Shown: piece by piece, positions 1-28,705 of the stretch
Numbering within the stretch: the first letter of the stretch is position 1
Layout: each line of letters opens with the position of its first letter
Assembly (NCBI GenBank): GCA_013115145.1
Contig: JAAPAO010000292.1
Span: 1 to 42,248 of the forward strand
Direction: 5' to 3'
DNA length: 42,248 bases
From: Perkinsus chesapeaki ATCC PRA-425
Lineage: Eukaryota; Protista; Perkinsozoa
The notes under the pieces: model-generated
Database searches by the model: none
What the model saw: the letters and a program-made list of their open reading frames with translations, nothing else
Told to the model about the DNA's origin: nothing
Program-made: the position numbers and the translations under genes

Positions 1-311
1 ACCGAGGTACTCCTTCAGGAAGGCCTGAGCATTGGGGACTATAGCATAGAGTGCTAGACGTTCCCCAAACTCTTGGAAAAGTATGAAGATAACAGCGTTA
101 AGCATCGGCCTCTGGTAGTAATGGTACACATTACCAGATGTGTCGGTCCATGAGAGGGAGTCTCGTTTAGCTGGCATTCAAGTTAAAGGATACAACTAGA
201 AAGTACAGTCTAGAGCAGTCAATTCCCTTCACGAAAGCTTTGCAATGCGTGAGCAAGGTGCACGTGGCTTCCTGCGTTGGGGAGCATCGAATGGGTTGCT
301 TCCCCGGGCAT
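1..311 (-). CDS. POT/PTR2 proton-dependent oligopeptide transporter, 5' part (runs off the window's left edge)
   Basis: Minus strand 170->1 reads ...RPMLNAVIFILFQEFGERLALYAIVPNAQAFLKEYLG, containing the POT TM1 ExxER motif. Probable ATG at 311 and a 62-nt GT-AG intron at 171..232 with matching phase. Confidence 0.8.
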
Positions 312-1049
312 TGTATATATGCAGGTTCTATCGTGGCTTCACCGAAGCCACTGGGCGCAAAATAAGTCCACATTCATAAATTCCTTACCGCGCTTTCTCT
401 AGCACACGACTTTCGGATTGTCTCTCATTTGAAGTCACGCATGTTTTCCAACCTTTGTTACGGTAGCTCCTGGATCAGGAGCCTTGATACTGACATGTTT
501 CCATGTTTACCGCAAAGCATGCGAAGTGTCCTCTACCATATTCCGGTCGCAATACACTTTCTGACTTTCAGACTTCTTCCACTAATCAAATACTCCGGAG
601 CTGAACAACGTCTGTAAAAAAGCGAACCTCTGCATCGAAACTCGATGATCGAATCTGTCACACAATCTCATGTCACCGCAATTGTCTCGCGCTACGGCAT
701 ACGATAGATCATTAGCTATTGCGTTATCGTTGTTTGTTCTAGGTAATAACTTTACTTGACGCTATAGTATTTAATCAGCAACTAGTATATGGTGCTTTCG
801 ACCCGGCTGTCTCTTCGTTGCCGATCTACTTGGACGGAATTGTCGTTTTGAACCCGTTGTGTCAGGGCGACCGAATTGCCACGGTGACACCTCGGTCACG
901 TTTATAAAGAGGTAGGTAATAAGCATTTGTGAGCTTATTTATTAGCGTAGGCCAGGTCATTCTATGGGCACTAGCTCGATATTAGTTGTGCTATGATTTC
1001 TATACAACTTAACGAGTGTAGAAAGCTGAGAATGGTTATCTTTGCCTTT

Positions 1050-1388
1050 GTAGTTGCCAGTTTGCTATTAGCTTCGTGATCTACACAGTTGCACGCATAC
1101 GTTTGGGTTGGAACTTCTTTCTGGCACTCAACGCCCTTGGAGTGTCATTCAAAAGGAGTAGAGGCACCAGCGTCACTCATTAGGAAATGGAGGTTTAGCA
1201 GCGATATAGCAGCTGATCGGTACCTAGGCACCATTTCTACAGATGCTGGGCATAGTTATGGAGCACCCGTCTACACCCAACTGGTGAGCCAAAGTGGAGT
1301 GCAGAACGGCATTGGTGCGGCTGATAATGTGCATTTGCACAACACTGTCCGCACATACTTCACTGCTTACTTTCTGTCAATGATTTAA
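1050..1388 (+). CDS. Probable exons of an unidentified protein (3' end)
   Basis: Last exon reads GTISTDAGHSYGAPVYTQLVSQSGVQNGIGAADNVHLHNTVRTYFTAYFLSMI*. Against the duplicate near 13984-14088, four of the five differences in the conserved part are synonymous in this frame. No family recognised. Confidence 0.35.
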
Positions 1389-1800
1389 ATTCGATGGTTC
1401 GTTCGCATCAATTAGAATACTCGAGTTGCAACTCAATACTCACATCCGACAACAATTACGAGTTATGATATAAAGGCAGTCGCATGCTCGTTGTTATGCA
1501 ACACAGACTGATTAGCGGCTCCGAGGCGGGGAAGTCGCCGTGTCCATTATGAACTTCATTAAATCGACATCGCTTATAGGGTACTGTCCGGCTTGGCGAA
1601 GAGGAGATTCTCCGACCGTATTCGGTCTCGTTGCAGACAAACCATGCTTGATAAGGAAACTGACAACAGTGCTCGAATATGATGCCAATGAATGTGGATT
1701 ATGCACGGTAATCATACAAAATATCAAATCGGTTTTGCAAAGTTTTCAACACTTGAGCGGAAGAATCTTCAAGCTCATACTGCACGTATGCTCGCACACA
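1232..1800 (+). repeat. ~570-bp direct repeat, copy A (copy B at 13925..14507)
   Basis: Long near-identical stretches, e.g. gtgagccaaagtggagtgcagaacggc... through ...ctcgcacaca, in both copies. Confidence 0.97.
1512..1800 (-). pseudogene. Orphan 3' fragment of the ankyrin-repeat gene (duplicate of 14212..14507)
   Basis: VVSFLIKHGLSATRPNTVGESPLRQA is ankyrin-like. Homology to the second locus stops at 1800 and no upstream ankyrin exons follow. Confidence 0.6.
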
Positions 1801-2202
1801 TCCTGCCTGGGGAACTTGGCTGCTTGGGCACCCAGGAGACCTGGGATAGGTTCGTGAATTGTTCCGAAAATGAGTTGGGTTTGGACATATTCAATGTTTG
1901 AATGATCGACGCTCTTAGCCACGGCTTGCTGGGTCAACCCAAAGGGTCGCCCCTTAAGGGAAACGTAGTTCGGGAATGCCGCTACTGCTAGCAACTGATC
2001 CGTGCCAAACGGGCTCCACTTCTCCAAATAACTTCCGATCGTAAACAAAATCCTTACGGTGCTGTATATAAATCTCAGCCGGTCCCTCTATGCATGTTCC
2101 CCTGCTTCCCCTGGGTATTTGCCTTCTTCAGCGCCTTATTCAAGGCTTCATAGGCCTGTTTACGAGAAGCTAGATTGGTTTGTAGAGCGAACCGAGCGTT
2201 GA

Positions 2203-2490
2203 GCTACTCAACGGCGTTGAGTAGCCAACTGGGCTTCCTGGAAAACTTCAGCTTCCTGGGCCGATCAAACCTTCCTTCCTTAGTAAGGAATCCTTACTTG
2301 ATCGAACTGGCAGTCATATTTCTTGCAGAAATGTTCTGCAGAATTGTAACATTCAATGCTTTCCTAAGGAAAGTTTCCTTGCATATAATTTACCGAAGTC
2401 ATGTGATGATTGATGATGTATACTATATACAACTCAACCAAGCCGGAATAGTCAATGGTTTCCAAATGAAGTTAGTTAGAATTTCTAACT
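2203..2490. repeat. Cluster of palindromic hAT-type excision scars
   Basis: Perfect 22-mers at 2276-2297 (T=TTCCTTAC) and 2359-2380 (T=CTTTCCTT). Degenerate copy at 2318-2339. Palindromes with a 1-nt spacer at 2203-2225 (11-bp arms) and 2474-2490 (8-bp arms). Confidence 0.8.
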
Positions 2491-2510
2491 GGGAAAAAGC
2501 TAATGAAAAA

Positions 2511-5450
2511 CTAGTCTGACGAGAGGTCAGAATCAGAGTTCTTCGAAATCTTGTCAACGCCCTCACTTTCGTCCACAGAAGCAGCACCTGCCTCGGCAGC
2601 ATTACGAAATCCCGGAAGCCTCGGCCGGTGGAAGTCTCGAGGGCCGGACAGTTCAGGATGCGGCTGGATAGCCAGAGTTCGATCTATCACTGTCGAGTGA
2701 ACTACATGTTTCTTGGCAAACTTGGATGATTTCTTCCGCCTGAAGCCAGTGAAAGATTCTGGCATCCTATCAAGGCTTGCCACCAAGAAATGGTCGACAT
2801 TGGAGGCTGAAAGCCCCAAGCTATTCCACATTAAGAGAGATTCATCGGCAAGCCCGGCATGACCAAGATGGCGACGAGCATCGCAACCATTCAGCGTAGA
2901 GCACTGAGCCTCGACAACACTCTCGCAGTGAGTCTTTAGGGCCACACACGCAATCACGAAAATGCAATCCTCACATCCACCATAGAGCCGAGACTGCGTG
3001 TGAATATCGGCCCAAATAGCGCCCATATCGACCATCTCGCCAGGCGGAAGTGGTAAGCAATTGGCGCGGATGCGGTCGCGGAGCTCTGCGTACTGAAGTT
3101 TCAATGCTTCAATACCAGGTTGCTCTTGTAGCTCGGGTTTGAACCCAATGACAAACTCAGCAACCACGCCGAAGAAGTCTATCGGACTTCGCAGGGCGGT
3201 CAGATCTTCATGAAGACCGTAGCTGTCGAGGAGATAGTCATCACGGTGTAGACAGATCTCATCACGACTTCCTAGGAGTGCTTCTCCGCTTAGACACTGG
3301 CAACAAGCTTCCAGCCACTTCGGGGTGTCTTGAAGAATCCTCCTTTTCAGCGCGGAAATGAGCTGTTTCATCCAGTCGATGCAAAACTGCAGTGACAGTT
3401 CGAAAATCCATGGAGATATGGGCGATAGATCCACGCCCTGCCAAGACCGTCCAATGAAGTCGATATCACGAAGAGTGGGTAGAGCATCTACGGAAAAGTA
3501 CCGAGGTTCTAGTCCTTCGATGTGCGCCGCTCTAGGGTCAGCGAGCTCGCTCACAACATCTCGGAGGGTCTCAACCTCTGCGCAGGCAATAATCAAGGTA
3601 TCCCGTAACGCATGCACTGCCGTGATAACTTGCCAAGGCCTCCGGTTCACAGCCTGTGCAGTGCATGAAACACCTGCTATGATGTTCATGACGTCATAGC
3701 ACACAGCGAACTTTACAAGCCAATCTAGTTTCTTGACCTGGGGAAAGTTGTCTACGCTACAGATGGCTCTGAAGTTCTGCACAAAGTTACGGTATACACG
3801 AGCCTCACTTGATGCCCATCGTGTAGCCGAGAAGGCCAGAGGAGCTGCAAACCTTACACCAAGCTTGGACGCCTCATCTCTGAGGTCCTCATATGCATTA
3901 CCGTGCCTGGACGGCATAGCGGGATGTAGCACACTTCTGACATCAGTCGTTCCCTTGTGCGAATCGTTGATAGCTAATTCTATACGATGCGCTACACACC
4001 ACGAGTGGTACAACTGGTCAGCGTCACAAGCCAGAGCTTCCCTCAACCGGCTCCAGACACGAAGACCGTGATACTCTCCGTCTGTCGCCAGGGCCACCAA
4101 GTTACTCCGCAACTGCTCCTCATCGAGGCCGAAGCACACAAGAGTGTCCACCAAGAGCTCGGTCAGTCCCTCACCCGTCTTATCAGTTACAACCGGGGCT
4201 GATAAGAGGTACGCAACGATTTTCCCGCGTACAAGTACCATCCCACAAGTAGCCTGCAGTGTGCGACGCTGCACCGTGACCTTGTCGCAACTCGCCGCAA
4301 TGGGGCTGCTGCGACCACCAAAGCAAGGCTGGCGGTCCATGAAAACCGCTACCATCCTAGCTTTCATCTCGGCCACCATGGCTCTAATGAAGGTTGGCAG
4401 AAAATGAGTTCTGGAATGATTCTTATCACCGAAGATAACCCCATTTTCAGCCTGCAAAGCCAGTGGACGCTCAAACGAACGGTGGCTCTGCCCTTCACAG
4501 ACGCTGAAATAGGCCGTCCTGGCAACGGCTAGCGCCTCATTTCTCCTTGTGCTCGCAACCCCGGAGTCAGCAATTGCCACTGATCTAATATGGGTAGCCA
4601 CATCTAAATGCTTCTTCAATGAAGACAAGATATCTCGCTGACGTTCCGGAGGGGGAATCTCAGTACCAAGGAGAAATATGCCGATACGGTCAAAGCTTGC
4701 AGGTCTCTCGTTGCGCGGGATAGACCACTTATGGAGATCACATACGGTACAGCGAATCTTAAGTGAAACCTCGTCAAGTTTGAATGGACCGATGGCACCG
4801 ATACGACGACAGAAATCGATCTCACGTCGGTGAGAGGCATCCCTAGACAGATGCTCATCTAGCTTGGCTGTGAGTCTATCGATCTTCTGAGACTGAGCCA
4901 TGAGTAGACTTGCCAATCCGGTCGTACTGAAAACATTGGCTGGCACCGGAGCTTTCTGGCCAATCGGGCTTGCCGTTTTAGGACGTGCGGGGGCCGCAAG
5001 CTTTGGTAAGACTTGAGGAGGTGAGGCAGGTCCTCGTGGTAAGAAAGGAGCATCGCTTCCCCGAGCTGGGCGGCAAGGTGCAGGACTAGCCGGAGCCCTG
5101 GAGTGCGCTGGAGCCCCAGGAGTTGCCGGGCCACTCTCTGGCTCTTGCGAACCTCGGGAGCCACCTCTGGCGGGGGAATTCAGACCTTTGAGAAACAACA
5201 AATACGTGACTGGAATTAGACGCCCAGGCGGTTCTCCCTTACTTTCGCTCTCCCTCTCACTGCATGTCCTTTTTCTGGGCAAAGGCTTGAACATATCTTT
5301 CAAAGAGCGTTGTCCTTTCTCAGTTTTGTATCTCTCTGGCATACCAGGATGGTGCTTATTGAAATGATCATAAAGACGGAAGTTGTCCTTTCTGCCCTTG
5401 TAGTCGCAATAGTAGCATTCGAGGGTTTCCTTCGACGGAGCGCTTGACAT
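2511..5450 (-). mobile_element. hAT-superfamily DNA transposase, apparently intact (979 aa ORF, or 960 aa if the 57-nt intron 5186..5242 is spliced)
   Basis: N-terminal CxxC..H...HH Zn finger. Candidate catalytic motifs SCDKVT, ATDGE, CVAH (CxxH), SATRW and C-terminal CESVVEAQCS. In-frame gtaagg...ctcaaag intron at the same position as the intron in the second copy. TIRs not found. Confidence 0.88.
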
Positions 5451-5565
5451 TTGTACGGATGAGTGTTAACACGGAGATAATAACTCTGACAATTTGGAGT
5501 ATTTTTCCGACTTGGAAGTTTTAACTGGTCGCCAGCAGGCCCACCTCCTTTCAAAGGATTGGTTC

Positions 5566-5964
5566 ATACTATTAAGTTAATAGTATTAACTTGAAGTTGA
5601 TAACTTCATAGGTAGTAGTTGGCAGTTACTAGCAACTACTCATAAACTAATATTTATACTAAATGCCCGTGCCGCATGACTGACTCCGGCGTCAATTTCT
5701 GTAAAGCTTTGTTAGACAGGCTCTTTCTCGTGCGGAGATTGCGCTCGCGTGCGGGGGTATGCAACACACCGTGTACTTGCGTGCAATGTTTTCAGCCGAG
5801 CTGCTTGGGACTCCCAAGCTGTGAGAGAATCAGGAATCCTGATTCAGGATTCTCTCCCAAGTTGGGAGAGAATATATAAAAATCACCTAATTGGGCGGAG
5901 TTCAAGAGGCATCTCTGGGCTCAACCAGGTTGAGTCAACCTCTTCAACTAGGTTGAATCAACCT
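5566..5964. repeat. Dense cluster of palindromic excision scars upstream of the hAT ORF
   Basis: Perfect 22-mers at 5569-5590, 5829-5850 and 5920-5941. One-mismatch copies at 5586-5607 and 5943-5964. 1-nt-spacer palindromes at 5803-5819 and 5849-5873. Confidence 0.85.
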
Positions 5965-6060
5965 CGAGAACCATGCTGCAACAGAAGTGCTGTTCATGCC
6001 GCACAGATTCTCCGTCATCTATTTCTTTCCCCTTTTGGGCAAAGACTTTTTTACCTTTGA

Positions 6061-6248
6061 TTCCTCCCTTTTCTTTCTCCCTCTCTTTTTGCCTCCTATC
6101 ATTTCTCTTTCCCTCTCTCTTCTCTCTTTTCCCCTCTCCCCTTCCTTTCCCTTTCTTTCCTTTCCCTTTCTTTCCTTCCCCTTTCTTTCTTTCCTTCCCC
6201 TTCCTTTCCTTCTTCCTCCCCTTTCCTTCCTTTTTTCGTGCCTTCCTT
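6061..6248 (+). repeat. Polypyrimidine (CT-rich) low-complexity tract
   Basis: 6102..6237 contains only C and T (136 nt). Confidence 0.95.
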
Positions 6249-7298
6249 GGCCACAGATGTGGCCGAGGGGCCCAGTTTTCCACCGCACTGCTCAACGCTG
6301 GCACTCCATCCGAGTACTTGTAACTTACAAGTTTGTGTAGCACAAGATATTGTGTGTAGCGTAAAATAGTGTGCTTGTAGGGAGCGCACGTTGTGTGTTG
6401 GTTGCACCACCCGTGGCAGTTTCGGGGTCATCCGGGGTTGAGTTAGTCAGTTGAACTCGCAAAGCTAAGATGTCTCTATGGTCGAGACTTTCATGGCATC
6501 TTCGCAGTTACGCAAGGTTCCAAACCTCTAATTTTTCGTTTCCTCTTTGGGAGGCGCCAGTCTTGCTCCTCTGAAGGCGATTGTCTAAGGAAGACTCTCG
6601 CTACTCTTAGGAGCATCCTGGCCCTGCGATACCTCATCGGAGCGTTCTAGCAGAACTTACTCCTGATCCAGGTATCGCCTCTTCTCAAGCTCCCGGAGAG
6701 GAAAGCGGTTTTAGTAAGCGCAAAACTTCAGAATTACTATTTTGTCTGTTATAAGAAAGTAGCAATCAGCCCATTCACCAATTCTTCAGGGCCTAGAAGT
6801 ATCATACTTCAAGTATGAGACTCTACTGTGAGCCTTCACAGCTTTGGGAGCCTAACGAGGCGTGACCTTATTAAAACTTTAGAACAGTACAGGGTCAAAG
6901 CCAGATTCGCTCCTCCGTTTTGCGCCTATCGTGAACGTGTCTTTGGGATTGTGCGTCTCGGACACATCTTATCTTCGAAGGCGGAGCACCCCTTGCACTT
7001 TGCAATGTGCTAATCCTACCCGATTGTGAGCCTTTAACAGTCAAGAAGACTCTTCTTGAAAGAGCATGGGTCAGCTCCCTACACACATTCCGAAACAGTC
7101 TAATATCACGATTACTTCGAGCAACGTCGCGGTTAACCCTATCTAAGTCAAGTGCTCTAGCTCGCGCCTCATTTATCGAGAAAACGCCGTGTGTGTATGA
7201 CCGAGCATCTGCCATAGTAGTGCTCTAGTGGTTCTTAACCACATCAAGAATGGGAAAGGATCGTCTCGCGTGACGATGGATTAACGAGTCTCAGATGG

Positions 7299-7320
7299 AT
7301 CACTCAGAGTGATTCACTCT
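7299..7320. repeat. Perfect 22-bp excision scar (T=ATCACTCT)
   Basis: atcactc-agagtgat-tcactct. Confidence 0.85.
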
Positions 7321-8258
7321 GGTTCTCACGGGTGCGCTTCATCATAAGAGCGAGAGCCGAGGCCCCTTGGTTTGTATAAGAAGATGAGCTTGATGAAGAG
7401 GACATTTCAACTTGAAATTTTCAAGCACGCGTGCCAAATTGACACATGGATTATTCGATTGAAAAATTTAATTCACCCTTTGCGGTCTAGGTCCGCGGCG
7501 ATTATCCGTATAATATACGATAATCGCCCAATTCCCTACATAACTCGGCAGAAGGATCCGCACCATCGGTTGAAAATGATGGGTCGCCCGGCTACAGGCT
7601 TTCCGGGAGGTAGAGCTTAGGTACCGCAAGGGGGGGGGGAGAAGGTAGTCTTGTATAAGACATTCTCACTATATAATATAAGACATCTCAACAACGTTGC
7701 ATGATATTAATTAATTTTCCACATTTTAAGCAATCACAGGAATAACATTTTCACGTTGACTGCAAATGCTTTGATGTTTTGATGCAAGACTGCTGAACAG
7801 TCACTGGTCTAATTACAAGAGACAAAAGGCAAGGACCCTAAAGCCTTCTGGAGGCCAGACCCTAAACTCTCTGGAGTCCAGAGCCTGGACTCCGCACAGA
7901 TACTGGACTCAATCGCTTTAACAACGTATTCGAGGATGCAGTGTGCGCCCAAATTGGAGCTCAACTCGGCCTCATTCGAGATACTCAGGACAAAATACTG
8001 GTGGCACTGCTGAGAAAAATCTCGTAAGACTGGACTGAAACCAGATTTATACCGGTACGGTGATGAATCATAGAATCACTAAGAATCACTCTAATCATGA
8101 CGCTGCCGAGTTGCATGGAGCACCGCTAGAAAACATTGATTGATTATCAATAACGAAGGTAATGCGAGGAGCGTATGCAATGTGAGATTACAATCGCATT
8201 GTTCGAAGTATGATAGCTTGAACGACTAACAAAACTCTTAGACAGCATCCATGCGCGC

Positions 8259-11200
8259 TCAGCGCGCCCTGCTACGGAGCGTGCCAGCTGTACAATTCCC
8301 GGGAGGGAACTTCATATGTCGCTCCCGTTTCTGCCTTATCCACGTCTTTATATGACGGGCTTCCAACTCTCGACACTCACGGACGTCGGCTCCATCCTAA
8401 ATGTTATCGTGAAAGGAGTCAACTTGTCTGCCGGCTTACCTCATCTCTTGAGAACATAAGATCTGAGTGATGTGCTCCGGTGTCCATTATGACCGATACG
8501 ACAGATGTAGGACATGGCATCACTGTGCAGTCTACACCTTGTGGGACTTCTCCTTCCGAGACGGAAACTGAGAATACAAACATAACAGTAAGTGTGTTTC
8601 GCAGTGTTACAATATTGAAGTACGCAGAAAACGTGCTAAATTATCAAAATAAAAAATTGAACGAAATTATGCAAAAACTGCAACCCAGTTTCGCTCTATC
8701 CAATCCAGTCTTGCAGCTACGCCCTAATTACTAGGGTGCTTGCAAGGAGAAAATCGAGCATGAACATGGCTAGTATGGAACATGCAGATTTAAATAAGCA
8801 AGGAACCAATGAAAAGGTATATAGAGGCTTACTAACATTAAGATAACCTGAAATGCAATATAATGAAGTGAATATGTTTCTATTATATACTATTAAGTAT
8901 AGTCCAGTCAAAACTGACTGAGTTAGTCATGATATATCTGTAAGGGCACTGTTAGATCTCACCTACCCATGGGTCGAACTTTCCATTAGTGAAGACAACG
9001 TTACTCATACTGGCCACAGCGTCCGCCATATTCCTCACGAACTGTAGGCTGGCCCGGGCTCTAGTAGTAACGCCATAACTGCAGAAAACTACATTCTAAA
9101 CCAATCCAGTCCGAGAAATGCTACATCTGTTTGCAGTCTGCCTTGTACGAGTCCATATCGAACTTATTGGTCGGCCAGAACATGTCATTCTCTGTACCCT
9201 GACCAGAAACGTGATAGGGACAGAAACGACCGGGCATCGCTGTAGATCAGCACGACAGCCCACCTGGTGAAATCCCCATGGCATCTGCGTGCACTCTTGG
9301 AAGCTGTAATCGCCTTCGCACGTATTTGGATAGTGGAATTCCATTTTGCTGAAACGATTAGTATATTCAAATAAACAAATCACCTCATGCTTAACTTACG
9401 TAGCATTGACGCACTCGGCGTTTCCCGAGGCATTATAGTAAATGTTGAGCGATTCCGCCAACGCTCGCAGGCGATCCTGAGAGTACGAAGGAAATTTCTA
9501 ATGTGACAAATGGTGAAAGCGAATCCGTTTTGGAAAGTTTCTGATAATCTTAAATATTTTAGCAGCTAAAGAAGCGTCTCACCTATACCCTCTCACCTTA
9601 TCTGTTCGAGCTTGTTCGAAGGGCGCGCATGCCGTACGAATGGGATTGGCAGGATAATATCCGTGACCACCTGTAAAATAGTTACTAGGATAAGGGTAGT
9701 TACCTAAAATAAGACATAAAAAGTTACCAAACATTCTGTGATGTCGCATTTAGCCGGCCCATTAGAGAGAACACTAGGCCGGATTCACTTAAAAGGTTCC
9801 GGGGCTGGTCAGACCAGCCTAATCTAGAGGCACATAAGAGCTGCAGCACTACTATCAGCCTTGAACTTACCCATGGCAAAGTACGTCCAAGCACAAGGCG
9901 CTGCCGAAGCAGCGAGAAGCGCTGTTAGGTGATGTGAAAGAGCATCAGGGCACCCCCTAATGGATCAATAACACTCCTGTGGAGGCTCAACTTGTACTGT
10001 AAGCGCCAAAACCGATCCGCTTCGTCCTTGAAGCCCTGCCATGCTCCCTGTGATGGTCCAAGTTCCTCAACCAGCTTCAGTGTCGCCTTCAAGTTGAAGG
10101 CTTCAACCTAAAAACAATAATGGGCCGATACTCAGTTCGTGCTAAAACACTTTAATGCTTGACATTGTCGTAACTGTTGTTAATTATGTACCACTCATAT
10201 GAACGCGTAGCCGGTCATTAATAAGTACTAAACATAATCTTCCCGTCGGTGCTCCTTTTTATCGAGGCAGCGGAAAAAAGCCAAAGGTATTGACAAGTTG
10301 AATAACCGAGGATGGAGATGCGATCAATTCGTCAAGATCAAACACCTACGAATTCCCGCTTCGTTGTTTCAATGGCAATATTCATTCGTCCCACGGAATC
10401 AGAGTGCAAGGGATGAACAAGCAGTCTTCATTGCATTTCGTCATCAAACGGGGATAGACTACAATAATGCACGTCGCCTCGGTATTGTCTTACTCTCTCG
10501 CGCATACGGGTCCAGCAGCTCGAGTTACTATCTCAGAAAAGGCGCCCATGCTAGGCTCAGGTGTAACACCGCCAATTGCGAAAATTGGAGCTGAGGAAGC
10601 GATGGCGCCGTCAACTAGGTGGGGATACCTGCCAAGGAACAATTGACACCTTGTCAATTTCTCTTAATGTACGAGCCTGAAACTGGGGCTGATCTACAGC
10701 CACTGCTGCGGGATCAGTGATGCATCACAAGGTGACCTATCGAATTCAATCAATCTCGATATAGCCCTTTGCGAATATTTGATGCAATACTTCGACCCTA
10801 CGAGCGAATGTGTAATGAGAAGAATTTTCTGCGTGAATGTGAACAGAATAAGAGGCTGCTTACCTGTAGCGGAATGCGCTTGCAAGCATACCACCATAAC
10901 TACCGCCAAAAGCGATGGTAGCGGTCGACGGTGGTAGAGAGTTCTCAGCAAATATGTGATCGATTAATACCTATAAGAAGCTATACACATCTTCGCATCC
11001 TTCGCTTCAAGACGATACTCACCGAGTAATCTCCAAGAGCTTGCTCGATAGTTAAGTAGCGTTTGCAATCAGGAGTCCCGTTTGGGTACACTAAGCTTTC
11101 ACCATAGTAGCGATGCTCGGCAAATACCAGCATAGCTCCTAGTTCGGACCTAAGAGACAATGAGTACGTCAGATTCAGTCAACGAGCAATAAGAGTATAC

Positions 11201-11547
11201 ACAGCGAGATTTGCTTACCCAAGCTCCCACATGAGACCTGTATGGTTGACATATAATTCCACTGACCCTTCATTCCCAGCATAAAAAAACACAGGTCCTC
11301 CTGGGCGGTGAAAGTCGGAATATGTAAAGTATCTAACGGGCGTCTCACGAATAATGCAACCAGGCAGAAGATTCCTTTGTTTGAGATCTCACCTTTGGTC
11401 GAATTTGCCAGGATTTGCATCGACACTGAACGAAAAGTGATCTCGATCTTGACGCAACCACCTCTCAGTACAGTTGGCCACGGTTGGTTGCCAGCTGAGT
11501 GGCGCCGCTTCAATAAAGCCGACGAGTAAGACAAGGCCTTTGAACAT
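8259..11547 (-). CDS. Multi-exon S28-family serine peptidase (lysosomal Pro-X carboxypeptidase-like), probably frameshifted by a scar at 10086-10107
   Basis: Spliced exons give MFKGLVLL...QDRDHF...FDQR|YF...GPVFFYAGNEG...EHRYYG...QALGDY...FGGSYGG...YPHLVDGAIASSAP...AMGNYPYP...ECTQM...NDMF...SNVVFTNGKFDPW...GAHHSDL...KTWI. These are the S28 signature motifs. Confidence 0.92.
10086..10107. repeat. Perfect 22-bp excision scar at an S28 exon start (T=CCTTCAAC)
   Basis: ccttcaa-gttgaagg-cttcaac. Confidence 0.85.
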
Positions 11548-12659
11548 GTAATATTATGAAAGAGAAAACTGATGAGGGCGTGAATATCAGGTATAAAGCG
11601 CACAGGTTAACGTAGTTGGATCATTCTACTTGAGGATGGCTGAACTCAACACGCTCGCTAAATAGCTGTAGGGGCCTTGTTGGCGTTGAACTCGACATGA
11701 TGGAGGGAAGTGAGATAAGGCTCTTATCTTTCATTGAAAGAGATGTGGTGAGGCCGACAGCTTGGAAGAGCTAAGCATCTGCACGCATGCGGGGCCCCAT
11801 GGCGAGGAGCACATAATATCTTTCGCTGTTCGCTGCGTGATTCGGGCTCCCTCTCGGAGAGGGCCTCTCCCAATTTTAAGCTAGTGCGCGGACGAACAGG
11901 TAGGATTTTAATATGAGATACACGAATTGTATTGAAGTAAAATCCACCAGTGCACCTCTCGGTCACGCACGCGTGCGCATTGTTCACGTCACGGGATTCG
12001 AGGATCAAATGTGTTGGTGAGTCAGCCGAGTCTGGTGACCAGACTCTGGCCTTGACCCAGCCATAACCCCTCCCTTGAAGGGGGGAAGAGGAGTCTCGCC
12101 AGTTTTAGAAGGACATATGACGAGATACCTCTATTTCCGCATAGCTGCTCTGTGTTTTTCCTTAGTTCTGAGAGTAGAGACATTTTTGTGCATGCATGCA
12201 AGTGTGAAGACAGTTTCTTGTGTAACGTTGTTCTCACAAGATAAGTCTGTAGTAGATGTGTCAATCATACAGATGTCAGTCATCTCACAGTGCAAGCTGG
12301 TACATAGACGGTGTAACATAGTCCAACTCGTAGGCAGTCAAACCTTGGTCCAACCTTATTTCGTACAGCGTAATTCATGTGGTATATATACCGTATATCG
12401 TACAGTTGCGACTCGTACAGTTTCAGCTGTGTTTGCATCAGTTGGTGCAGTATTATTTTGTCTCGTTGCACTTAATACAGTATTATTCGGAACAACTTTG
12501 TAAGGTACAGTTACAAGTGTTACAACTGATACAATGCCAGTTCGTGATGCCATTGATTTCACTGAGCGTGAATCTGCAGTGGTTAACCCTAAGTTGGACT
12601 CCACGAAGATGGTTTTATTAACAAACCTCAAGAAAGTCCTCAGTGGTTTTCCGGGCTAC

Positions 12660-13330
12660 TCTGACACTCTACGTCAGCTAGATTGTACCCTTACGTCAGG
12701 TCTTCAGTTCAAGAAGCATCTAAGCGGAAGACTGGTACTCGCAAAACAAATTGGGAATATGGCGTTACGGCAATGTGGGGCACTCATGGGGAAGAATCGA
12801 GGCGTCTCTGTCGGAATCTTCACCGAAATATACAATAAAATACTACTACCAATCATTCTATATGCCCATGAAATATGGGGAGGAACTATTGCAAATAAAA
12901 CCGTAAGAGAAGAGATAGATCTTTTGGGGGCTAGCTTCCTTATAAGAGCTTTAAGGGTTAGAAGGAGTACACCCCGTCCACTACTATATATTGCCTCTGG
13001 AGTGACGCCACTATCGCGATTGGTAGCAGAGAGAGTAGTTCTGGCTCACATCCACAAAAGGCCAATGGACATGCATATGAAAGGGAGGGTAGGCTGAACC
13101 TACCAGGTTCTACCAAATTTCGAGAGCTGCTGGAGGAGTGGGGCTTCCCCACCACTCATCATTACTGTGAGGATAATACACCTGGAAAAGTTGTCAAACC
13201 CGCTGATACCAAATTTCGTCTTTCTCTATTGAGAGATTACCATATTGTTAGAATGGTATCCTCTTTATCTGAAGTTCAGATTCTGAACCCTTGCGACACA
13301 ATACGAAAATACGTGACGCAATATGCCTAG
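12660..13330 (+). mobile_element. 5'-truncated, frameshifted non-LTR retrotransposon fragment (RT thumb/connection region)
   Basis: LDCTLTSGLQFKKHL...KNRGVS...IYNKILLPIILYAHEIWG...LRVRRSTPRPLLYIASGVTPL matches the LINE post-RT pattern. No YADD core is present. Continues in another frame to ~13330; a (GTT)n run lies at ~13445-13460. Confidence 0.75.
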
Positions 13331-13551
13331 CATAGTGTGTGACATTACTGCCGTACGTTGGGCTCTACCGAAGCCTTGTTATGGCTGCAACACTTGTCCA
13401 GATCCCGCACTTGGAATCCCGAAGGCGCGGGAGTACAGGAGAAGGTTGTTGTTGTTGTTGTTTGCCTGTATTTGTCTCCGCTTGTACTGTACGGAATAAC
13501 ACTGTATGACGTACAGTGTATGTGTGGATACTGTGCAAAAAGACGATACAA

Positions 13552-13905
13552 TACTGTAGTACAGTTACTGTACGAATCGTAACTGTAGGGCTCAAAAGTG
13601 TATGTGTAGCAACTATAGTATAGTCACTATACGGATAAGGCCCTTATCATAAGGGCTACACGAATAGGTGTTCTGCGACCTTGCATTGTATGATATGATC
13701 CTCACTCCGTAATGTCCATCATGAGACTTCTTATTTTCCTCCAATGAATTTATTAGCCGCCGAAAGCATCACGCATAAAGGTCTTGAAGAAGGCGGTTCC
13801 CTGAGGTTTGAGGTAACCTCAATGAGGTGCTTTGCTGTGCTATGATTCCAGTATAACTTAGTCAGTGTAGGTAGCTGAGATTCTCAGCTACCTGCACTGA
13901 CTAAG
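13552..13905. repeat. Cluster of near-perfect excision scars plus a 24-bp-arm hairpin
   Basis: One-mismatch 22-mers at 13552-13573, 13611-13632 and 13808-13829. A +1-base variant at 13634-13656. Hairpin at 13857-13905. Confidence 0.8.
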
Positions 13906-13924
13906 GAGGCACAACATTAGGTAG

Positions 13925-14507
13925 CATTTCTACAGATGCTGGGAATAACTATGAGGTAACTGTGGAATAACGATGCGCAAGTGGTGAGCCAAAGTGGAGT
14001 GCAGAACGGCATTGGTGCGGCTGATAATGTGCATTTGCACAACACTGTCCGCACATACTTCACTGCGTATTTCCTATCAATGACTTAAATTCGATGGTTC
14101 GTTCGCATCAATTAGAATACTCGAGTTGCAACTCAATACTCACATCCGACAACAATTACGAGTTATGATATAAAGGCAAGCGCATGCTCGTTGTTATGCC
14201 ACACAGACTGATCAGCGCCTCGGGGAAGTTGCCGTGTCCATTATGAACTTCATTAAGTCGACATCGCTTATAGGGTACTGTCCGGCTTGGCGAAGAGGAG
14301 ATTCTCCGACCGTATTCGGTCTCGTTGCAGACAAACCATGCTTGATAAGGAAACTGACAACAGTGCTCGAATATGATGCCGATGAACGTGGATAATGCTA
14401 ATGGATAATGCACGGTAATCATGTTGTCGAACAAATCAGTTTTGCAAAGTTTTCAACACTTGAGCGGAAGAATCTTCAAGCTCATACTGCACGTGTGCTC
14501 GCACACA
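13925..14507 (+). repeat. ~580-bp direct repeat, copy B (copy A at 1232..1800)
   Basis: Direct sequence comparison with copy A. Confidence 0.97.
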
Positions 14508-16100
14508 AAGCGAATAGTGTGCCGAATAAGAGAATTAAACTGAATATATTCTGACGATTCTGTAAAGTAACTTCTAAATGTCGAGTGAATAAGTCGAATT
14601 GGTATCCCATGCTTAGTCTAAGCTATTTACTTGATCATTTCCTTCTGTTCGCTCGTGCAGTGCTCCTCCGATCTCGACGCACGGACACAATAATGGAGAG
14701 CTGTGTTGCCGAGATTGTCACTCTGCAGCACATTGGCATAATAGTCGTCAACTAGCTTCTTCAGATCTCTTGCCGTCCCTGCTGACTACTATACAGACGA
14801 CAACAGCGATCGGTACCATATCGAGCACACAATAGCAGAGCTGTCCTCCCATGATGGTCCTTTGTTGAAATCTCAGCTCCTTCATCTAGTGCATGCTCAA
14901 CTGCTTCCTTCGGGTATCCGCCTTTATCAAAACCTTGCTGGATAATTCCCCTCAGCACCAGCGAACTCTCCGACAATCGCGCTGACGCGGTCGATCTCGC
15001 TGTAAGTGGCGGTCTACTCGAGGCTGCATCAGTAGCAGCAGCATGTACGGTACACCCGGAAAGCTGAGAAAGTACCGGTGAGAGCGGTATGGCTGCTCCG
15101 CCGAGGGACTTACCATCTCCAGCAACGCTTCCGCTACCTCTGGATGAGCGTTCCCCCGAACCGCCAGCTGTACTGGAGTTTCACCGCTCTTACTGGGAGC
15201 ATGTGGCTCAGCATTTGCCGCAATTAATAGAGATACGATGCCTTTTACCTATCCTTTAGCGATCTTAAAGGAGACATCCTATTTTTTTTGATTTCCACGG
15301 ATGTGAAACACCAAATATGCATCTAGCCTATCAGTGTCGAAAAAAGTCCCTAATGCGGATGTGTAATATGAATTTTCACTAGAGTACAGTCTGAAAACAA
15401 ATACGTTCCTCCCAGGAGCATTAGGCGCTTCTCTACGACTCTCCACGAGAAACACCCACGGACAAAGTACTATGGGGACTGTTTCTCTCTTTGCGAAGAC
15501 TCCTTCGGAAGGAGTCCTTCCCTATTTGTCGTCGAGTACTTAGAATGTCTACTTACGTCCTCCAACACACTCCACCCGCGCTTGCTAAATATAACCATAC
15601 AATGTTCTCTGCGGAGCGCTCAAGATGACTGCTTTCTTTGGTTACTATTATTTTCAAGAGAAAGTATGTAACAGACCACTAGACCACTACCAGGAGTTCA
15701 CCTGCCCGGGCGACGGCTTCTCCTTCCGCCTAGCCACGAAATGGAGCACACTGAATCGACCCTTATCGCATATCGTTGGATCCGCCCCCATACTCACACA
15801 TTGCTCAACCTGCAACCGACGGGCCAAGTCCAGACTGCTCAGCCGACATCTCCCCTACTTGTTTCTCACTCCCCCATCGAGCGAGCCCCATCAAAGCAGT
15901 CCTGCCGAAGTGATCCGAGCAATTCACTACTTCAGAATCCAATGCGCGGAGCAATCTAAACGAGTCTCTGTCTCCTCCGTTTTCGATTTCAATTATCACT
16001 TTTCTAGCCTCACCGAGGCCTGCTTTTCACTGTGATTGTCGTGCAGCGCCGCGATGAGCTCCTCTATTTTCTCCCGACCACTTGGCGGTTTCTTCGACTG
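14212..16100 (-). CDS. Multi-exon ankyrin-repeat protein (5' end uncertain, may be damaged)
   Basis: Ankyrin-like segments NCSDHFGRTALMGLARWG, VSMGADPTICDKGRFSVLHFVA, AANAEPHAPSKSGETPVQLAVRGNAHPEVAEALL, DEGAEISTKDHHGRTALLLCARYG, SDNLGNTALHYCVR and LIKHGLSATRPNTVGESPL. Confidence 0.75.
15500..15521. repeat. Perfect 22-bp excision scar inside the ankyrin gene (T=CTCCTTCC)
   Basis: ctccttc-ggaaggag-tccttcc. Confidence 0.85.
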
Positions 16101-16517
16101 TGCCAGCGTACCAAAATGCACTTTGCAAAATGATTATTTACCAACACAACTCCCCGCGAGTTCTGAGTAAATGGTGACTCATTAGCCAGCAGTACGGCAA
16201 CACGAGCTGCTTCCATAGGAGGCGAACGCCGTTAGAAGCCGGGAATAGTGGGCAATCAGCGGCCCGGCCTACCGTACAGTCGACTTAATCACACACAATG
16301 GTTGAATGATACTCGGAAATCTTCAAGCAGTGCTACACACCATAACCCTCCCGAAGAAGGGAATGGCGGTACTGAGGTGGTTGAACAAAATATTCTTGGG
16401 GATTAGCCCGATGGAATGGAGGAACAATCCTCGAAGAAGGAAAAGGCAACTCGGCAGCGATAGCAGCAGCTGACGGTGGTCCTTCATCCTCTTGAGAAAC
16501 TATCGCGATTCATCTTT

Positions 16518-18545
16518 TTACATCCGAGGGGCGAAGATGGGGACGATCTCCTCGATATGATCCTTCTTCTTGAGAACAATCTGAAAGGATAACAATAATA
16601 AAAACGAAGGAGGCAAGAAAACGCTATTGGATCACTTGAAGCAAGGAGCAAACAAGCGGTTCTTTTGAGTGAAAAACACCTACCGACAAACAACAAAGCA
16701 AGAACGTGACGAGCACTGAATGAAATAAGTCGAAGAATAAATGGAATGGAGCTAGAAGGGTGGAGTTGATAGAATTAAAGAACTAGCATTAATACAGCCA
16801 ATCACATACAATCGATACAATAGAGTCAGTCAAAACAATTAAATAACAAACTGAGTAGATTAACATATCTTTTGAATGGATGGTAGATTATGTAAAGAGC
16901 AATAAATCATTATGTACAATCTCAATGTCTAGATACTTACCATATTAGCCATCCATTCAATGTTCTTCATCTCCTGAATGCGCAGCTTAACCCAAGAGTA
17001 GATGATACCATAATGATACTGTTGCTCGAAGGAGTTCTCGTACATGCGCACCGACTCGACGTACAAGAGATCCTCAATGGACTTATAGCGGCCTTGAGTA
17101 GCCTTATCGACCTTTGAATCACGGTCGTAGAACTGCTTGCACTGATCGTACAACTGAGCGTACCTAACCATCACAAGAAATGAAACAATATCGATCATGG
17201 GAGCTAAGCCAGCTCACTTAAGATAGGGCTCCAAAGCGGCACGGACGGCAGTATCACTGGTAGCCTTCATGAGCTTGTCGGTTCCCTCGGGATAAAGGTA
17301 GCTAAATAAAAGGTAATAACTACTACAAGCAATCAGCAGCGACGACGAGCCTACCCGAAGTCGGGATAAAGAGCGTTACGCTCATCCAAGTTCTGAGGGG
17401 TTCCTAGAGGGGAGTTGAGGGAGTTGAGGGTGACCATAAGGACCTGAAGCAGCATACTGCAGTGGATGGATAAGTCCAAGATCCCTACTCTGTAATCGGC
17501 CTCGGTCTTCAGAATGTTGCCCATCACCTCGGCGGTGTCGCTGTTCTCACTGGTGTTCTCGCAGAAACGATAAAAACTCTCCATCCAGCACTTCTTCAAG
17601 AACTGACAAGGACCGCGAATCAACCTCCAAAATATCTTATCGTTTCAGCCTACATTCCTGAGAATCTCGAGATCGGTCTCAGTGAGGACGCTGTGAACCT
17701 CGCCGTGAGAGACAACGGCAGTGGCGCCCTGAGGAACGCCCTGAGCTGACGCGCCCTGACCTTCAGTGTGGGTGTGGACGTGCTTGGAATTGAGGAACTC
17801 CTCGAAGTAACTAATAATAACGGCTATTAGGCTTCAAGACGCCATATGATCCTTACGGTCCCAGAGGAGTGTCGATGAGAATGGTGCGGTAGAGATCCTC
17901 GTAACCATGAGTGAAGTCCATACCAGGAATGGTCTTCATCTCCTCGAAGTATCCAAGGGGATCGCAACGAGCAAGAAGTTCCTAGGGGAAGGAAATGAAC
18001 TAGAGCTTGGCGACGGCGGTGGCAGCTAGCTACCTTAGGATTCTTGTTGTTGATGGTTCCCTGAATAAGCATCACCACATTATCAATCATGGCCTCTTGA
18101 CGGACGTAATCCATGAATCTGAGAGAAGCCATGTCTACCGAATTGGAACGGTTGTTGGCGTCGTCGTCGTACTTGGCCATCTCTCCGACGGACTGAGCTC
18201 TGACGTAGTCGAACTCCTCGGCCAAACGCTCATGGCACTTGCGCATGATAGTGGAAACCTGGAGGAAGGGCTATGGCGAGTGGTGCTGAGTGGTGCCCCT
18301 TACCTGGAGAGGACTGGGCTCATCCTGCAAAAAAGTACCGTAGTCGGTATCCTCTAGGGCTGTTCGGAGATCTGAGAAGAAGCTGGTATGAAAGAGCGAT
18401 GCTGATAGACGAGCGAGTTACCTTCAAGATTCTCTCCGTTGGCAATACGACGGTAGTCATCGCCGGTGAGGAAGCCGGAACGAAGGCCTCTTACGAGACC
18501 CTCTCCGAATCCATCATCGATATTGAAGTAAATAAGATCAGCCAT
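16518..18545 (-). CDS. vma6: V-type proton ATPase V0 subunit d, multi-exon
   Basis: MADLIYFNIDDGFGEGLVRGLRSGFLT...RFMDYVRQEAMIDNV...WMESFYRFC...EVMGNILKTEADYR...YHYGIIYSWVKLRIQEMKNIEWMANM...DHIEEIVPIFAPRM*. Confidence 0.95.
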
Positions 18546-19414
18546 GGGGAATGGAGAACAACTACTGACGATCTTTCTGATACAAAAACCGTAAAATATC
18601 TCCGCACTAATACGCAGATTGTGTGGCGTCCTTCAGCTTCGTAAAAATCCATCAATCAACTCAGCCATTTTGCGCTTAGTCCCGCGCTACATCAAGAACG
18701 CGAGGATACCCGAAACGATAGCAACACCACTAGAACGCTGCCAATTTCCTACCAACGGGAACAGCTTGCGAAGTAGCATTATGGCAGCACCAACATTTTA
18801 GCTATCATGACCTCTGTCGCACCAAATGTCTCTCCAGCGTCGGCCCTAGGCAGCTGCTCAGCGTTGGCTGAGGCAATCTTGCTATCTCGAAGTTTCTTAA
18901 CGCGTGGAGTGCCTGTCGCGCGAGCCATTCTGATCGATTTTTTCCTTGTCGGCCTTGTCCCCGAGCGATGGGCGAAAGGAAAAGGGTTGTATGGTAAATT
19001 AAATGGTGTATTGGAAGCCTTGCTGAGGGTTGTTTTTTCGTGTTAGAATTGGTTTTTGGTGTCAGGGCTCCTGCCCAGGGGCCCTGGGGACCGTCGTCAT
19101 GTTCCTTGGTGGACTTTGGAAAAATGCAGCCAGTCGATTACACATATTAGAATGAAGCTTCTTGGGAGCTTGATTTTATAATCGAATCTGATTAGGACGA
19201 CTTTTCGCTTCTCTGGATTCTCGGGGTCGATGACATCCTCCCAGGAGTCGTAACCCAACATATGATTCTTAATGCGCTCTGGAAACGCTCCACTTGGTAT
19301 CTATCTACATTCGCGCCACGCCTGTGGGTCCTTCAAAGGCTTCTAGGACGGAACTTTCCAGCGTTCTCCTATATTTTATATCTTTAGTGTTTTCGTGTTA
19401 ATTGGTTTTCCGCA

Positions 19415-25051: not shown

Positions 25052-25413
25052 GCTTCTAAACATGAGTACTTTTTATGACATGCAATTGCACTTGCGTTTC
25101 GCGTTCGTCGCTGGTGAGCCATCTAGGTTTACACAATGGTCACCGGCTCATGATGATGATATCTGTTCTTGGGCATTGTTGGGCATCTTCATGGTAGCTT
25201 TAATCCTTTCCGTTTAGCCAGGTGCGCCTCCCTCGCCATAACGTTACATATTAAAGCCTTGTACAGAAGATGATGTTCATACCGCGTGCGTGCAAGGCCG
25301 GTTGAAACTCCTGGCTTTACTTCTGTGGTAAATCGGCAACTTCCCTGCACGGTTATATGAAGCTTGCAAGAAACTGTCTCACCTGTTCTTAGCTCGGTAC
25401 AGTGTATTGTTGA

Positions 25414-28176: not shown

Positions 28177-28705
28177 GATTATGATAGGGGCGTATGAGTT
28201 TTAGTGGTTTGCAATGGGGGCTGGCATACACGACGGGCATCGCCACCTTCTTGGGCTCTGGTATACCTTACAGTCGCTTGGGCTCTGGGGGATATGTTGT
28301 AGAGAAATGAGTTAGCTGGCTCAGAGAATTGCGGTACTTGGTTGAATAATAGATGGGAATGATTGGGGCATTTCGCTGGCGATTTTGTATTTTACAGCTC
28401 TGAAGGGCGAAAATTCACAAAAATGTCCCGGAATCGCCGGGACAAAAATTGCCAAACTTCGAACCGGGCTAGCTGATACCGAATCTCAGATATAAAGGAG
28501 ATGTATGCCACACCTGCCAACTGGCAGGTGGAACGCATTCCTCCTTCACGTCCACGTCTGGGAAAAAGCTTCACAAACCTGAAAATGAAATATTGGACAA
28601 TTTCAACTGCGAGTGAGCGAGCAATTGGCCAGAGAGTCTTTTCTGAAGCAGCATTGTGAATTCCAATTCACCGAATTCTTATCACTCGCTTCTGCTGCTG
28701 CTGTT

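What the first reader, a model, noticed from the sequence alone, without database searches (positions are those of the whole stretch)
10086..10107. A scar appears to knock out the S28 peptidase, and removing exactly 14 bp restores the frame
SEEN: the upstream exon ends in phase 2 (...gcg aga ga|gtaagac, donor at 10493). The next acceptor (ag at 10108-10109) is followed immediately by the scar. As written, the spliced frame reads E-L-K-P-S-T-stop (TGA at 10089-10091). Collapsing the 22-mer to one T gives ...VCARELKATLKLVEELGPSQGAWQGF..., an open helical continuation. The two nearby alternative AGs also hit stops. INFERENCE: this independently shows the scar is a +14-bp insertion into a pre-existing site and that these scars act as frameshift mutagens.
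Basis: partly seen in the sequence, partly recalled or inferred. Interest (0 to 1): 0.78.

Follow-up and report, generated by a model that had tools for sequence, protein, structure and literature searches.

The report
Transposon scar frameshifts a peptidase gene
In the clam parasite Perkinsus chesapeaki, a 14-letter scar of the kind left by a departing jumping gene sits at the very start of one exon of a peptidase gene and shifts its reading frame; this is a classic type of mutation, new for this organism, and whether the gene is truly dead still needs RNA data.

Summary
The 22-mer at 10086-10107 (minus strand) follows acceptor AG 10109-10108. With the conserved donor (last exon base 10494) the frame reads E-L-K-P-S-T-stop.

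The window is a whole Perkinsus chesapeaki contig. The gene is S28 peptidase FOL47_005227.

- **The scar is a derived +14 bp.** Five homologous loci keep the same phase-2 intron: two P. chesapeaki paralogues, two P. olseni loci and one P. marinus locus. All have 8 nt where the window has 22. The 8-nt reading is gap-free against all relatives.
- **The scar class is real.** The window holds 18 exact and 41 near-exact scars, only for 8-bp targets. Targets show the hAT nTnnnnAn bias. This scan has already noted the class more than 20 times on other DNA of this genome.
- **The lesion looks recent.** Every other exon is intact, catalytic Ser, Asp and His are present, dN/dS is 0.29, and there is no rate acceleration.
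- **"Knock-out" is likely but unproven.** No RNA run exists. Two weak cryptic donors restore the frame, and the public annotation uses one. Both delete a cysteine invariant in 122 of 122 homologues.

Footprint frameshifts are classical, so interest is moderate.

The parts
10086..10107 (-). 22-bp scar: first 7 nt of the target, full inverted 8-mer, last 7 nt of the target (target GTTGAAGG). It replaces the first 8 nt of exon 6, a net gain of 14 bp.
   Evidence: The 8-nt state is seen in five homologous loci.
10494..10628 (-). S28 exon 5 (R-YPHLVDG...GPVCAR-E). It ends in phase 2 at the conserved donor GA|GTAAGA.
   Evidence: PRCP alignment. Pfam S28 profile positions 134-150. Donor score 7.9 bits. 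The same donor is present in paralogue L004.
10108..10493 (-). Intron 5 (386 nt), canonical GT..AG. Its position and phase are conserved in all five homologous loci.
9998..10107 (-). Exon 6 as it stands, with the scar at its 5' end. The downstream part encodes ATLKLVEELGPSQGAWQGFKDEADRFWRLQ.
10089..10091 (-). Premature TGA reached under canonical splicing (..CARELKPST*).
10502..10507 (-). Cryptic phase-0 donor GTATGC. It restores the frame exactly (-14 +14) but deletes VCARE, which includes the invariant Cys.
   Evidence: Score 0.6 bits. Also present as GTATGT in paralogue L004.
10523..10528 (-). Cryptic phase-0 donor GTAACT, used by the public gene model P0004 (net -21 nt). Its GT comes from an Ile-to-Val codon change seen only in this copy.
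   Evidence: The other loci have ATA, ATT or ATC at this codon.
9957..9997 (-). Tiny 41-nt intron 6 with non-consensus donor GTACAA. It is conserved in paralogue L004.
   Evidence: and the sequence.
8259..11547 (-). Whole S28 peptidase gene (FOL47_005227), about 14 exons. All exons other than exon 6 are intact. Catalytic GGSYGG Ser, NGKFDPW Asp and GAHHSDL His are present.
9804..9825 (-). Second, older scar (2 mismatches) inside intron 7 of the same gene.
2511..5450 (-). Intact 979-aa intronless ORF, probably hAT (Buster/ZBED5-like) transposase-derived. It lies 2.8 kb downstream of the S28 gene on the same strand, and scars hug both its ends.
   Evidence: Atlas features and structure; a lead only. 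(single P. marinus orthologue, 68% identity). No Pfam or PDB sequence match.

Best explanation
A cut-and-paste element with an 8-bp target duplication, of hAT type, once inserted at the first 8 nt (GTTGAAGG) of exon 6 of the P. chesapeaki S28 peptidase gene FOL47_005227. It later excised.

The proposed repair route is as follows.
1. Excision left hairpin-capped flanks.
2. The hairpins were opened far from their tips.
3. The two 3' tails annealed through the 8-nt inverted copy of the duplication.
4. This gave the fixed product: 7 nt + inverted 8 nt + 7 nt, a net +14 bp.

The first 7 exon nt and the whole 3' splice site are unchanged, and the conserved donor is strong. The main transcript should therefore carry +14 nt, shift frame and stop after five codons (..CARELKPST*). 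That loses most of the non-catalytic middle region and the catalytic Asp and His. The allele is most likely a recent null, tolerated because at least two other S28 paralogues exist.

**Shown:** scar geometry, polarity (+14 derived), frameshift under the conserved splice sites, integrity of the rest of the gene.

**Inferred:** hAT origin, the repair route, splice choice, loss of function.
For: **Geometry and abundance**
- 18 exact scars, only at k=8.
- 41 near-exact scars against about 0.25 per shuffle.

**Polarity**
- Five homologous loci have 8 nt at the same exon start behind the same phase-2 intron.
- The 8-nt reading is colinear with the paralogues and fits a stretch that is indel-free in nearly all of the 122 homologues aligned.

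**Frameshift**
- With the canonical donor, no AG within 45 nt restores the frame.
- The canonical donor scores 7.9 bits; the cryptic donors score 0.6 and 1.8.
- The cryptic isoforms delete a Cys invariant in 122 of 122 homologues.

**Recency**
- The scar is perfect (0 mismatches in 22).
- All other exons are open, with Ser, Asp and His present.
- Lineage-specific amino-acid changes: 15 in the window copy against 18 in the paralogue.
- dN/dS against the paralogue is 0.29.

**hAT type**
- 8-bp targets show T2/A7 at 49% against 26% background, p=2e-6. This is the Hermes 5'-nTnnnnAn-3' preference (PMC10368747).
- The palindromes are centred on the complement of the base next to the element end, as in Ac/Ds footprints. 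In yeast those footprints have palindrome arms of up to 20 nt and usually show microhomology (PMC5873905).
- A hAT-like ORF lies 2.8 kb away.

**Selection**
- All 5 scars in paralogue L004 are intronic.
- No scar lies inside the hAT-like ORF or the Pfam-supported ORFs of the window.

**Fixed in the sample**
- The contig across the scar has the same word depth (about 61) as its neighbours, and no scar-less contig was laid.
Against: - There is no RNA evidence at all, so splice choice and transcript decay are inferred.
- Two cryptic donors restore the frame. Perkinsus uses some non-consensus donors (GTACAA, GTAGCA).
- The GT of one cryptic donor is a change specific to this copy, which could be compensatory.
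- The absence of any decay elsewhere in the gene is what a still-functional gene would also show.
- No occupied site or TIR-bounded element was found in the window.
- The nearby hAT-like ORF has no Pfam or PDB sequence match, and my AlphaFold model was unusable.
- The only read set is probably the assembly's own source.
Confidence: 0.65

Rival explanations
1. The gene is still functional. The scar is tolerated because splicing has moved to a cryptic phase-0 donor, as in the public model P0004. The mRNA then stays in frame and the scar encodes VEAFN.
For: - Both cryptic donors give an open, correctly phased exon 6.
- The annotation uses ATA|GTAACT.
- That GT exists only in this copy.
- The rest of the gene shows no decay.
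Against: - The cryptic donors score 0.6 and 1.8 bits against 7.9 for the intact canonical donor just downstream.
- Both isoforms delete the Cys that is invariant in 122 of 122 homologues, and they alter a stretch that is indel-free in nearly all of them.
- P0004 is a poor ab initio model. It also skips exon 2 and exon 7 and misreads the last exons.
Confidence: 0.2
2. The 22-mers are not footprints of a mobile element. Instead they are repair products of 8-bp staggered breaks made directly by a resident, possibly domesticated, hAT-like nuclease, or by fold-back template switching during end joining. The effect on the S28 gene would be the same.
For: - No TIR/TSD-bounded element was found around the hAT-like ORF.
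- That ORF is single-copy, with one 68%-identical orthologue in P. marinus, like a host gene.
- Scars hug this gene in both species.
Against: - The exact one-base offset, the strict 8-bp length and the nTnnnnAn target bias are what integration followed by hairpin excision predicts.
- A nuclease that only cuts would not be expected to leave a duplicated target.
I did not check that note.
Confidence: 0.12
3. The 14 extra bases are an assembly or sequencing artefact.
For: The only run that holds the stretch is probably the assembly's own data.
Against: - Independent contig building (Logan) reproduces the scar with no differences.
- Scars avoid exons and ORFs, decay with mismatches, and show a target-site bias.
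- Scars also occur in the separate P. marinus assembly GCA_000006405.1.
Confidence: 0.03

Closest known systems
Ac/Ds (hAT) excision footprints in maize, Arabidopsis, yeast and Candida
   Same: - 8-bp target duplication.
- Flank-hairpin intermediate.
- Palindromic (P-nucleotide) insertions centred on the complement of the base next to the element.
- Microhomology at the joint.
- Footprints in exons give stable frameshift alleles.

Sources: PMC5873905 and PMC5499845. The maize mutant alleles are textbook knowledge.
   Different: - Known footprints are heterogeneous and mostly short. In Candida the longest P insertions were 3 nt. In yeast, 47% had palindrome arms of 3 nt or more.
- Here nearly every scar is the one maximal product that uses the whole 8-nt inverted duplication.
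- No active element or excision event has been observed in Perkinsus.
Hermes transposase target choice
   Same: Preference for 8-bp targets of the form 5'-nTnnnnAn-3' (PMC10368747). The scar targets show T2/A7 at 49% against 26% background.
   Different: - The bias is weaker than a strict consensus.
- The enzyme responsible in Perkinsus is not identified.
Lysosomal Pro-X carboxypeptidase (PRCP) and DPP7, peptidase family S28
   Same: - Exon-wise, colinear Pfam PF05577 matches.
- PRCP (3N2Z) and DPP2 PDB hits.
- GGSYGG Ser, Asp, His and the conserved Cys are all encoded.
   Different: - This copy carries a +14-bp lesion at the start of exon 6.
- It is one of at least three paralogues in P. chesapeaki.
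- Its substrate and role in the parasite are unknown.
Long P-nucleotide coding joints in V(D)J recombination when hairpin opening is off-centre
   Same: Hairpin-capped ends opened away from the tip give inverted copies of the flank. This rests on established knowledge and was not tested here.
   Different: - Different enzyme system.
- Those joints are variable, not one fixed product.

Membership tests
Peptidase family S28 (PF05577) | Sequence match to the family profile, colinear over the gene. | tested here: met
   - Exons match profile positions 17-53, 55-100, 106-131, 134-150 and 374-390 in order.
- Single exons mostly score below the whole-protein cut-off; their sum is about 100 bits.
- The annotated product P0004 carries PF05577.
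- PRCP and DPP2 PDB hits.
Peptidase family S28 (PF05577) | Catalytic Ser (GxSYxG), Asp and His present. | tested here: met
   GGSYGG, NGKFDPW and GAHHSDL are all encoded and aligned with the paralogues.
Peptidase family S28 (PF05577) | An intact reading frame giving a full-length enzyme. | tested here: not met
   - With the conserved donor and acceptor, the frame stops 5 codons into exon 6.
- Only weak cryptic donors restore it, with loss of the invariant Cys.
hAT-type excision footprint | 8-bp target-site duplication. | tested here: met
   The scar rule holds only for k=8: 18 exact cases, and none for k=5-7 or 9-12.
hAT-type excision footprint | Palindromic insertion centred on the complement of the base next to the element end (flank-hairpin signature). 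| tested here: met
   The 7 + inverted 8 + 7 geometry places both palindrome centres on the complemented terminal bases. This matches the description in PMC5873905.
hAT-type excision footprint | Target preference nTnnnnAn. | tested here: met
   46 targets: T2/A7 at 49% against 26% background, p=2e-6. Consensus taken from PMC10368747.
hAT-type excision footprint | The unscarred ancestral site has a single copy of the 8-mer. | tested here: met
   Five homologous loci have 8 nt at the same exon start. These are paralogues or relatives, not alleles of this locus.
hAT-type excision footprint | A hAT transposase and TIR-bounded elements in the same genome. | tested here: inconclusive
   - The 979-aa ORF groups with hAT/Buster families only by ESM Atlas features and structure and by motifs read by eye.
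- No Pfam or PDB match.
- The AlphaFold model was unusable.
- No TIR/TSD pair was found around the ORF.
hAT-type excision footprint | Excision observed, or an occupied allele at the same site. | not testable with these tools
   Only one DNA run, probably the assembly's source, holds the locus.
Pseudogene | Relaxed constraint or further disabling changes. | tested here: not met
   - dN/dS is 0.29 against the paralogue.
- Lineage-specific changes are 15 against 18.
- No other stop or frameshift was found.
- The lesion is therefore young, or the gene still works.
Pseudogene | Loss of a functional transcript. | not testable with these tools
   No RNA run is available.

The most novel reading that the evidence does not exclude
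The scar has been taken into the coding sequence rather than killing the gene. A copy-specific Ile-to-Val change created a new phase-0 donor (ATA|GTAACT). With it the +14-bp scar is read in frame as VEAFN in place of a 12-residue segment. Excision footprints together with a splice-site shift would then be a source of new exon sequence in Perkinsus.
Probability: 0.1. Interest if true: 0.6.

Novelty: new member of a known kind. Interest (0 to 1): 0.42.

Why it matters
- **Polarity of the scars.** The coding frame and five homologous loci give a check, independent of the scar pattern itself, that the Perkinsus 22-mers are derived +14-bp insertions at single 8-bp sites.
- **Cost to the genome.** The process that makes them has recently hit a coding exon. 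It is therefore a live or recently live source of loss-of-function mutations in this shellfish parasite, not only a feature of spacer DNA.
- **Annotation quality.** The public gene model threads around the lesion. That warns that scars can distort annotation in this genome.
- **Evidence for a hAT origin.** The target-site bias (nTnnnnAn) adds a test of the hAT origin that does not rest on the scar geometry.
- **General principle.** Footprint-induced frameshifts have been known since the Ac/Ds work, so the principle is not new.

Tried and rejected
- **Scar-less allele.** Laying that run's contigs at 85% or more likeness showed none. It did show a paralogous locus.
- **Alternative acceptors with the canonical donor.** All fail.
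- **Exon 6/7 boundary.** My first guess (donor GTGTTA) was wrong. Paralogue L004 shows a 41-nt intron with donor GTACAA.
- **P. marinus model P0002.** It seemed to lack the exon. The exon is in the DNA and was merely skipped by the model.
- **hAT-like ORF.**
  - Pfam on the whole protein and on pieces gave no hAT match; only weak, sub-threshold C2H2 zinc-finger hits at the N-terminus.
  - PDB searches by sequence and by profile found nothing relevant.
  - An AlphaFold2 model from a 2-sequence alignment had pLDDT 31 and was unusable, so no fold search was run.
  - A TSD+TIR search around the ORF found nothing convincing.
- **Synteny.** The S28 gene is not next to the hAT-like gene in P. marinus.
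- **Ribosomal frameshifting.** The frameshift decoding known in Perkinsus is mitochondrial (PMC9550989, listed). I considered it and set it aside because this is a spliced nuclear gene.
- **Literature.** Searches for Perkinsus hAT footprints found no paper.
- Exons were searched by reference one at a time. Only a few codons either side of candidate junctions were joined locally, to read the frame.

Full report
**What is there**

On the minus strand, the S28 exon ending ..GCG AGA GA is followed by GTAAGA (last exon base 10494). A 386-nt intron follows, then the acceptor AG at 10109-10108. Immediately after it comes the 22-mer GTTGAAGCCTTCAACTTGAAGG, at 10107-10086.

The 22-mer has the form X[1-7] + revcomp(X[1-8]) + X[2-8], with X = GTTGAAGG. 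Read with these splice sites, the frame gives ..VCARELKPST and a TGA at 10091-10089. The two AGs inside the scar also lead to stops. Two AGs further on stay open but end the exon in the wrong phase.

**The scar class**

A mechanical scan finds 18 exact 22-mers of this form in the window for an 8-mer target. It finds none for targets of 5-7 or 9-12 nt. With two or fewer mismatches there are 41, against about 0.25 per shuffle.

This scan has already described the class on more than 20 other pieces of the same genome. The class is therefore not new here. I treat those notes as leads only.

**Organism and gene**

The annotated product of this locus is P0004, "hypothetical protein FOL47_005227 [Perkinsus chesapeaki]". 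Its only contig is 42,248 nt long, so the window is the whole contig JAAPAO010000292.1 of GCA_013115145.1.

- Single exons match Pfam Peptidase_S28 colinearly, at profile positions 17-53, 55-100, 106-131, 134-150 and 374-390.
- The exon before the scar aligns to human PRCP (3N2Z) and DPP2.
- Laid as separate fragments on the Perkinsus paralogues, all 14 exon fragments that I defined are present and open. They include GGSYGG (Ser), NGKFDPW (Asp) and GAHHSDL (His).
- The scar is the only lesion.

**Polarity of the change**

I fetched five homologous loci:
- two P. chesapeaki paralogues (L004 for P0022, L005 for P0023)
- two P. olseni loci (L002, L003)
- one P. marinus locus (L001)

All keep an intron at the same place and phase. 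In all of them the exon begins, directly behind the AG, with 8 nt: GTTCAAAG, GTTTAAAG, ATTTAGAG, ATATAAAG or GTTCAACG. These are followed by the conserved ..TGAAG.. stretch. The window has 22 nt in place of the 8.

With a single 8-mer the window reads CARELKATLKLV. This is gap-free against:
- CAREFKETMKLL (P0022)
- CAKEFKATLKLI (P0023)
- CAKRFRDTLKLV (P. olseni)

In an alignment of 122 S28 homologues the Cys is invariant (122 of 122). The ten residues after it carry no indels in nearly all sequences. The 14 bases are therefore a derived insertion in this copy.

**Does it knock the gene out?**

The first 7 nt of the exon and the whole 3' splice-site context are unchanged by the scar.

I built a donor weight matrix from 38 Perkinsus S28 introns:

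| Donor | Last exon base | Score (bits) |
|---|---|---|
| Canonical GA\|GTAAGA | 10494 | 7.9 |
| Cryptic CCC\|GTATGC | 10508 | 0.6 |
| Cryptic ATA\|GTAACT | 10529 | 1.8 |

The median score of the 38 training donors is 8.9 bits.

Both are phase 0 and both restore the frame. The first does so exactly (-14 +14). The second gives a net -21 nt.

The public model P0004 uses the second and reads the scar as VEAFNLK. That model is poor elsewhere: it skips exons 2 and 7 and misreads the last exons. Its choice is therefore not evidence of real splicing.

Both rescue forms delete the invariant Cys. I therefore rate a null allele as most likely (about 0.65) and rescue as possible (about 0.2). No RNA run exists in the index for this organism, so this step is an inference.

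**Age and state**

- The scar is perfect.
- The gene shows no acceleration: 15 window-specific against 18 paralogue-specific amino-acid changes at 262 polarised sites.
- dN/dS against L004 is 0.29 over about 380 codons.
- No second disabling change was found.

As a rough inference, about 1.4 kb of coding sequence without a single new stop suggests the lesion is younger than about 0.05 substitutions per site. The dS between the paralogues is 0.38.

In the only run that holds the locus, the contig across the scar has the same word depth (about 61) as its neighbours, and no scar-less contig was laid. That run is probably the assembly's own source. The scar looks fixed in that culture, but this is not independent support.

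**What made it**

The geometry is what the hAT flank-hairpin model predicts.
1. The first nick, one base into the flank, puts the complement of the terminal target base at the hairpin tip.
2. If both hairpins are opened at least 8 nt from the tip, the two 3' tails are complementary over exactly the 8-nt inverted duplication.
3. Annealing and trimming then give 7 + 8 + 7. This derivation is my inference.

Published Ac/Ds footprints have palindromic insertions centred on the complement of the base next to the element. In yeast their arms reach 20 nt, and they usually show microhomology (PMC5873905). Flank hairpins are shared by hAT, Transib, RAG and MULEs (PMC5499845).

As a new test, I took the 46 targets inferred from scars in the window, L004 and L005. 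They show T at position 2 and A at position 7 in 49% of cases, against a 26% background (p=2e-6). This is the Hermes 5'-nTnnnnAn-3' preference (PMC10368747).

Scars avoid coding sequence:
- All five scars in paralogue L004 are intronic.
- None lies in the hAT-like ORF or the Pfam-supported ORFs of the window.

**A possible enzyme next door**

An intact 979-aa intronless ORF lies 2.8 kb downstream on the same strand (2511-5450).

Evidence for a hAT link:
- The ESM Atlas places it with hAT/Buster-type families (Dimer_Tnp_hAT, DUF4371, FAM200-ZBED5) by features (0.91) and by structure (TM by query 0.36-0.55).
- Read by eye, it has hAT-like WCVAHRIELA and ATRWASS motifs.

Evidence missing:
- Pfam and PDB sequence searches fail.
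- My AlphaFold model was unusable.

The assignment is therefore a lead.

The ORF has one orthologue in P. marinus (68% identity, full length) and no other relatives in the word search. I found no TIR/TSD pair around it, so it may be domesticated.

Scars hug it in both species:
- In the window, four within 235 nt downstream and seven within 520 nt upstream.
- In P. marinus, two within 330 nt upstream and a perfect one 88 nt downstream.

**Verdict**

- The "+14 into a pre-existing site" reading is confirmed.
- "Frameshift mutagen" is confirmed for the conserved splice sites.
- "Knock-out" is likely but untested.

Footprint-induced frameshifts are classical, so I file this as a new member of a known kind, of moderate interest. 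Its main values are the independent polarity proof, evidence that the process is recent and costly, and a warning about gene models in this genome.

Exons were searched singly, by reference. Only a few codons either side of candidate junctions were joined locally, to read the frame.

Noticed in passing
window 2511-5450 (-); L006 10001-12920: An intact 979-aa hAT-like ORF with a single 68%-identical, full-length orthologue in P. marinus (PMAR006353). It has no detectable TIR/TSD. Scars cluster tightly at both its ends in both species. It may be a domesticated transposase and the source of the scars.
   Followed up: partly
window about 40243-41827 (+), running towards the contig end: A second, diverged hAT-like sequence. 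It is 32-57% identical, in pieces, to the first ~490 residues of the P. marinus hAT-like protein. It is split over ORFs 39989-40468 and 40683-41498, and a scar at 40017-40038 lies inside the first ORF.
   Followed up: no
window 8259-11547 (-): The public gene model FOL47_005227 (P0004) is wrong in several places. It skips exon 2 (YFTYSDF..LMWELG) and exon 7 (GCPDAL..YFAMG). It reads through the 41-nt intron. It uses donor TGG|GTAGGT instead of the phase-1 donor G|GTGAGA, and so ends early in the wrong frame.
   Followed up: yes
window 9957-9997 (-); L004 4425-4468: A tiny 41-44-nt intron with the non-consensus donor GTACAA, conserved between the two P. chesapeaki paralogues.
   Followed up: partly
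window 6243-6298; L006 9276-9335: A stretch of about 50 nt upstream of the hAT-like gene is conserved between P. chesapeaki and P. marinus (tblastx 80-90% over 16 codons). It is the only conserved flank found.
   Followed up: no
L004 (P. chesapeaki paralogue locus) versus L001 and L006 (P. marinus): Scar density differs strongly between species in these samples. L004 has 14 scars with one or fewer mismatches in 8.6 kb. P. marinus L001 has none in 10.8 kb, and L006 has three in 22.9 kb (four with two or fewer mismatches).
   Followed up: partly
window 1-16000 versus 16000-35000: Scars are very unevenly spread: 32 of 41 lie in the first 16 kb and one lies between 16 and 35 kb. That scar-poor stretch holds the PP2C and two tandem thioredoxin-Erv1 (QSOX-like) ORFs.
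   Followed up: no
window 10523-10525 (-): The codon GTA (Val) in ..SEIVTR.. is ATA, ATT or ATC (Ile) in all five homologous loci. This single change creates the GT of the cryptic donor used by the public model.
   Followed up: partly
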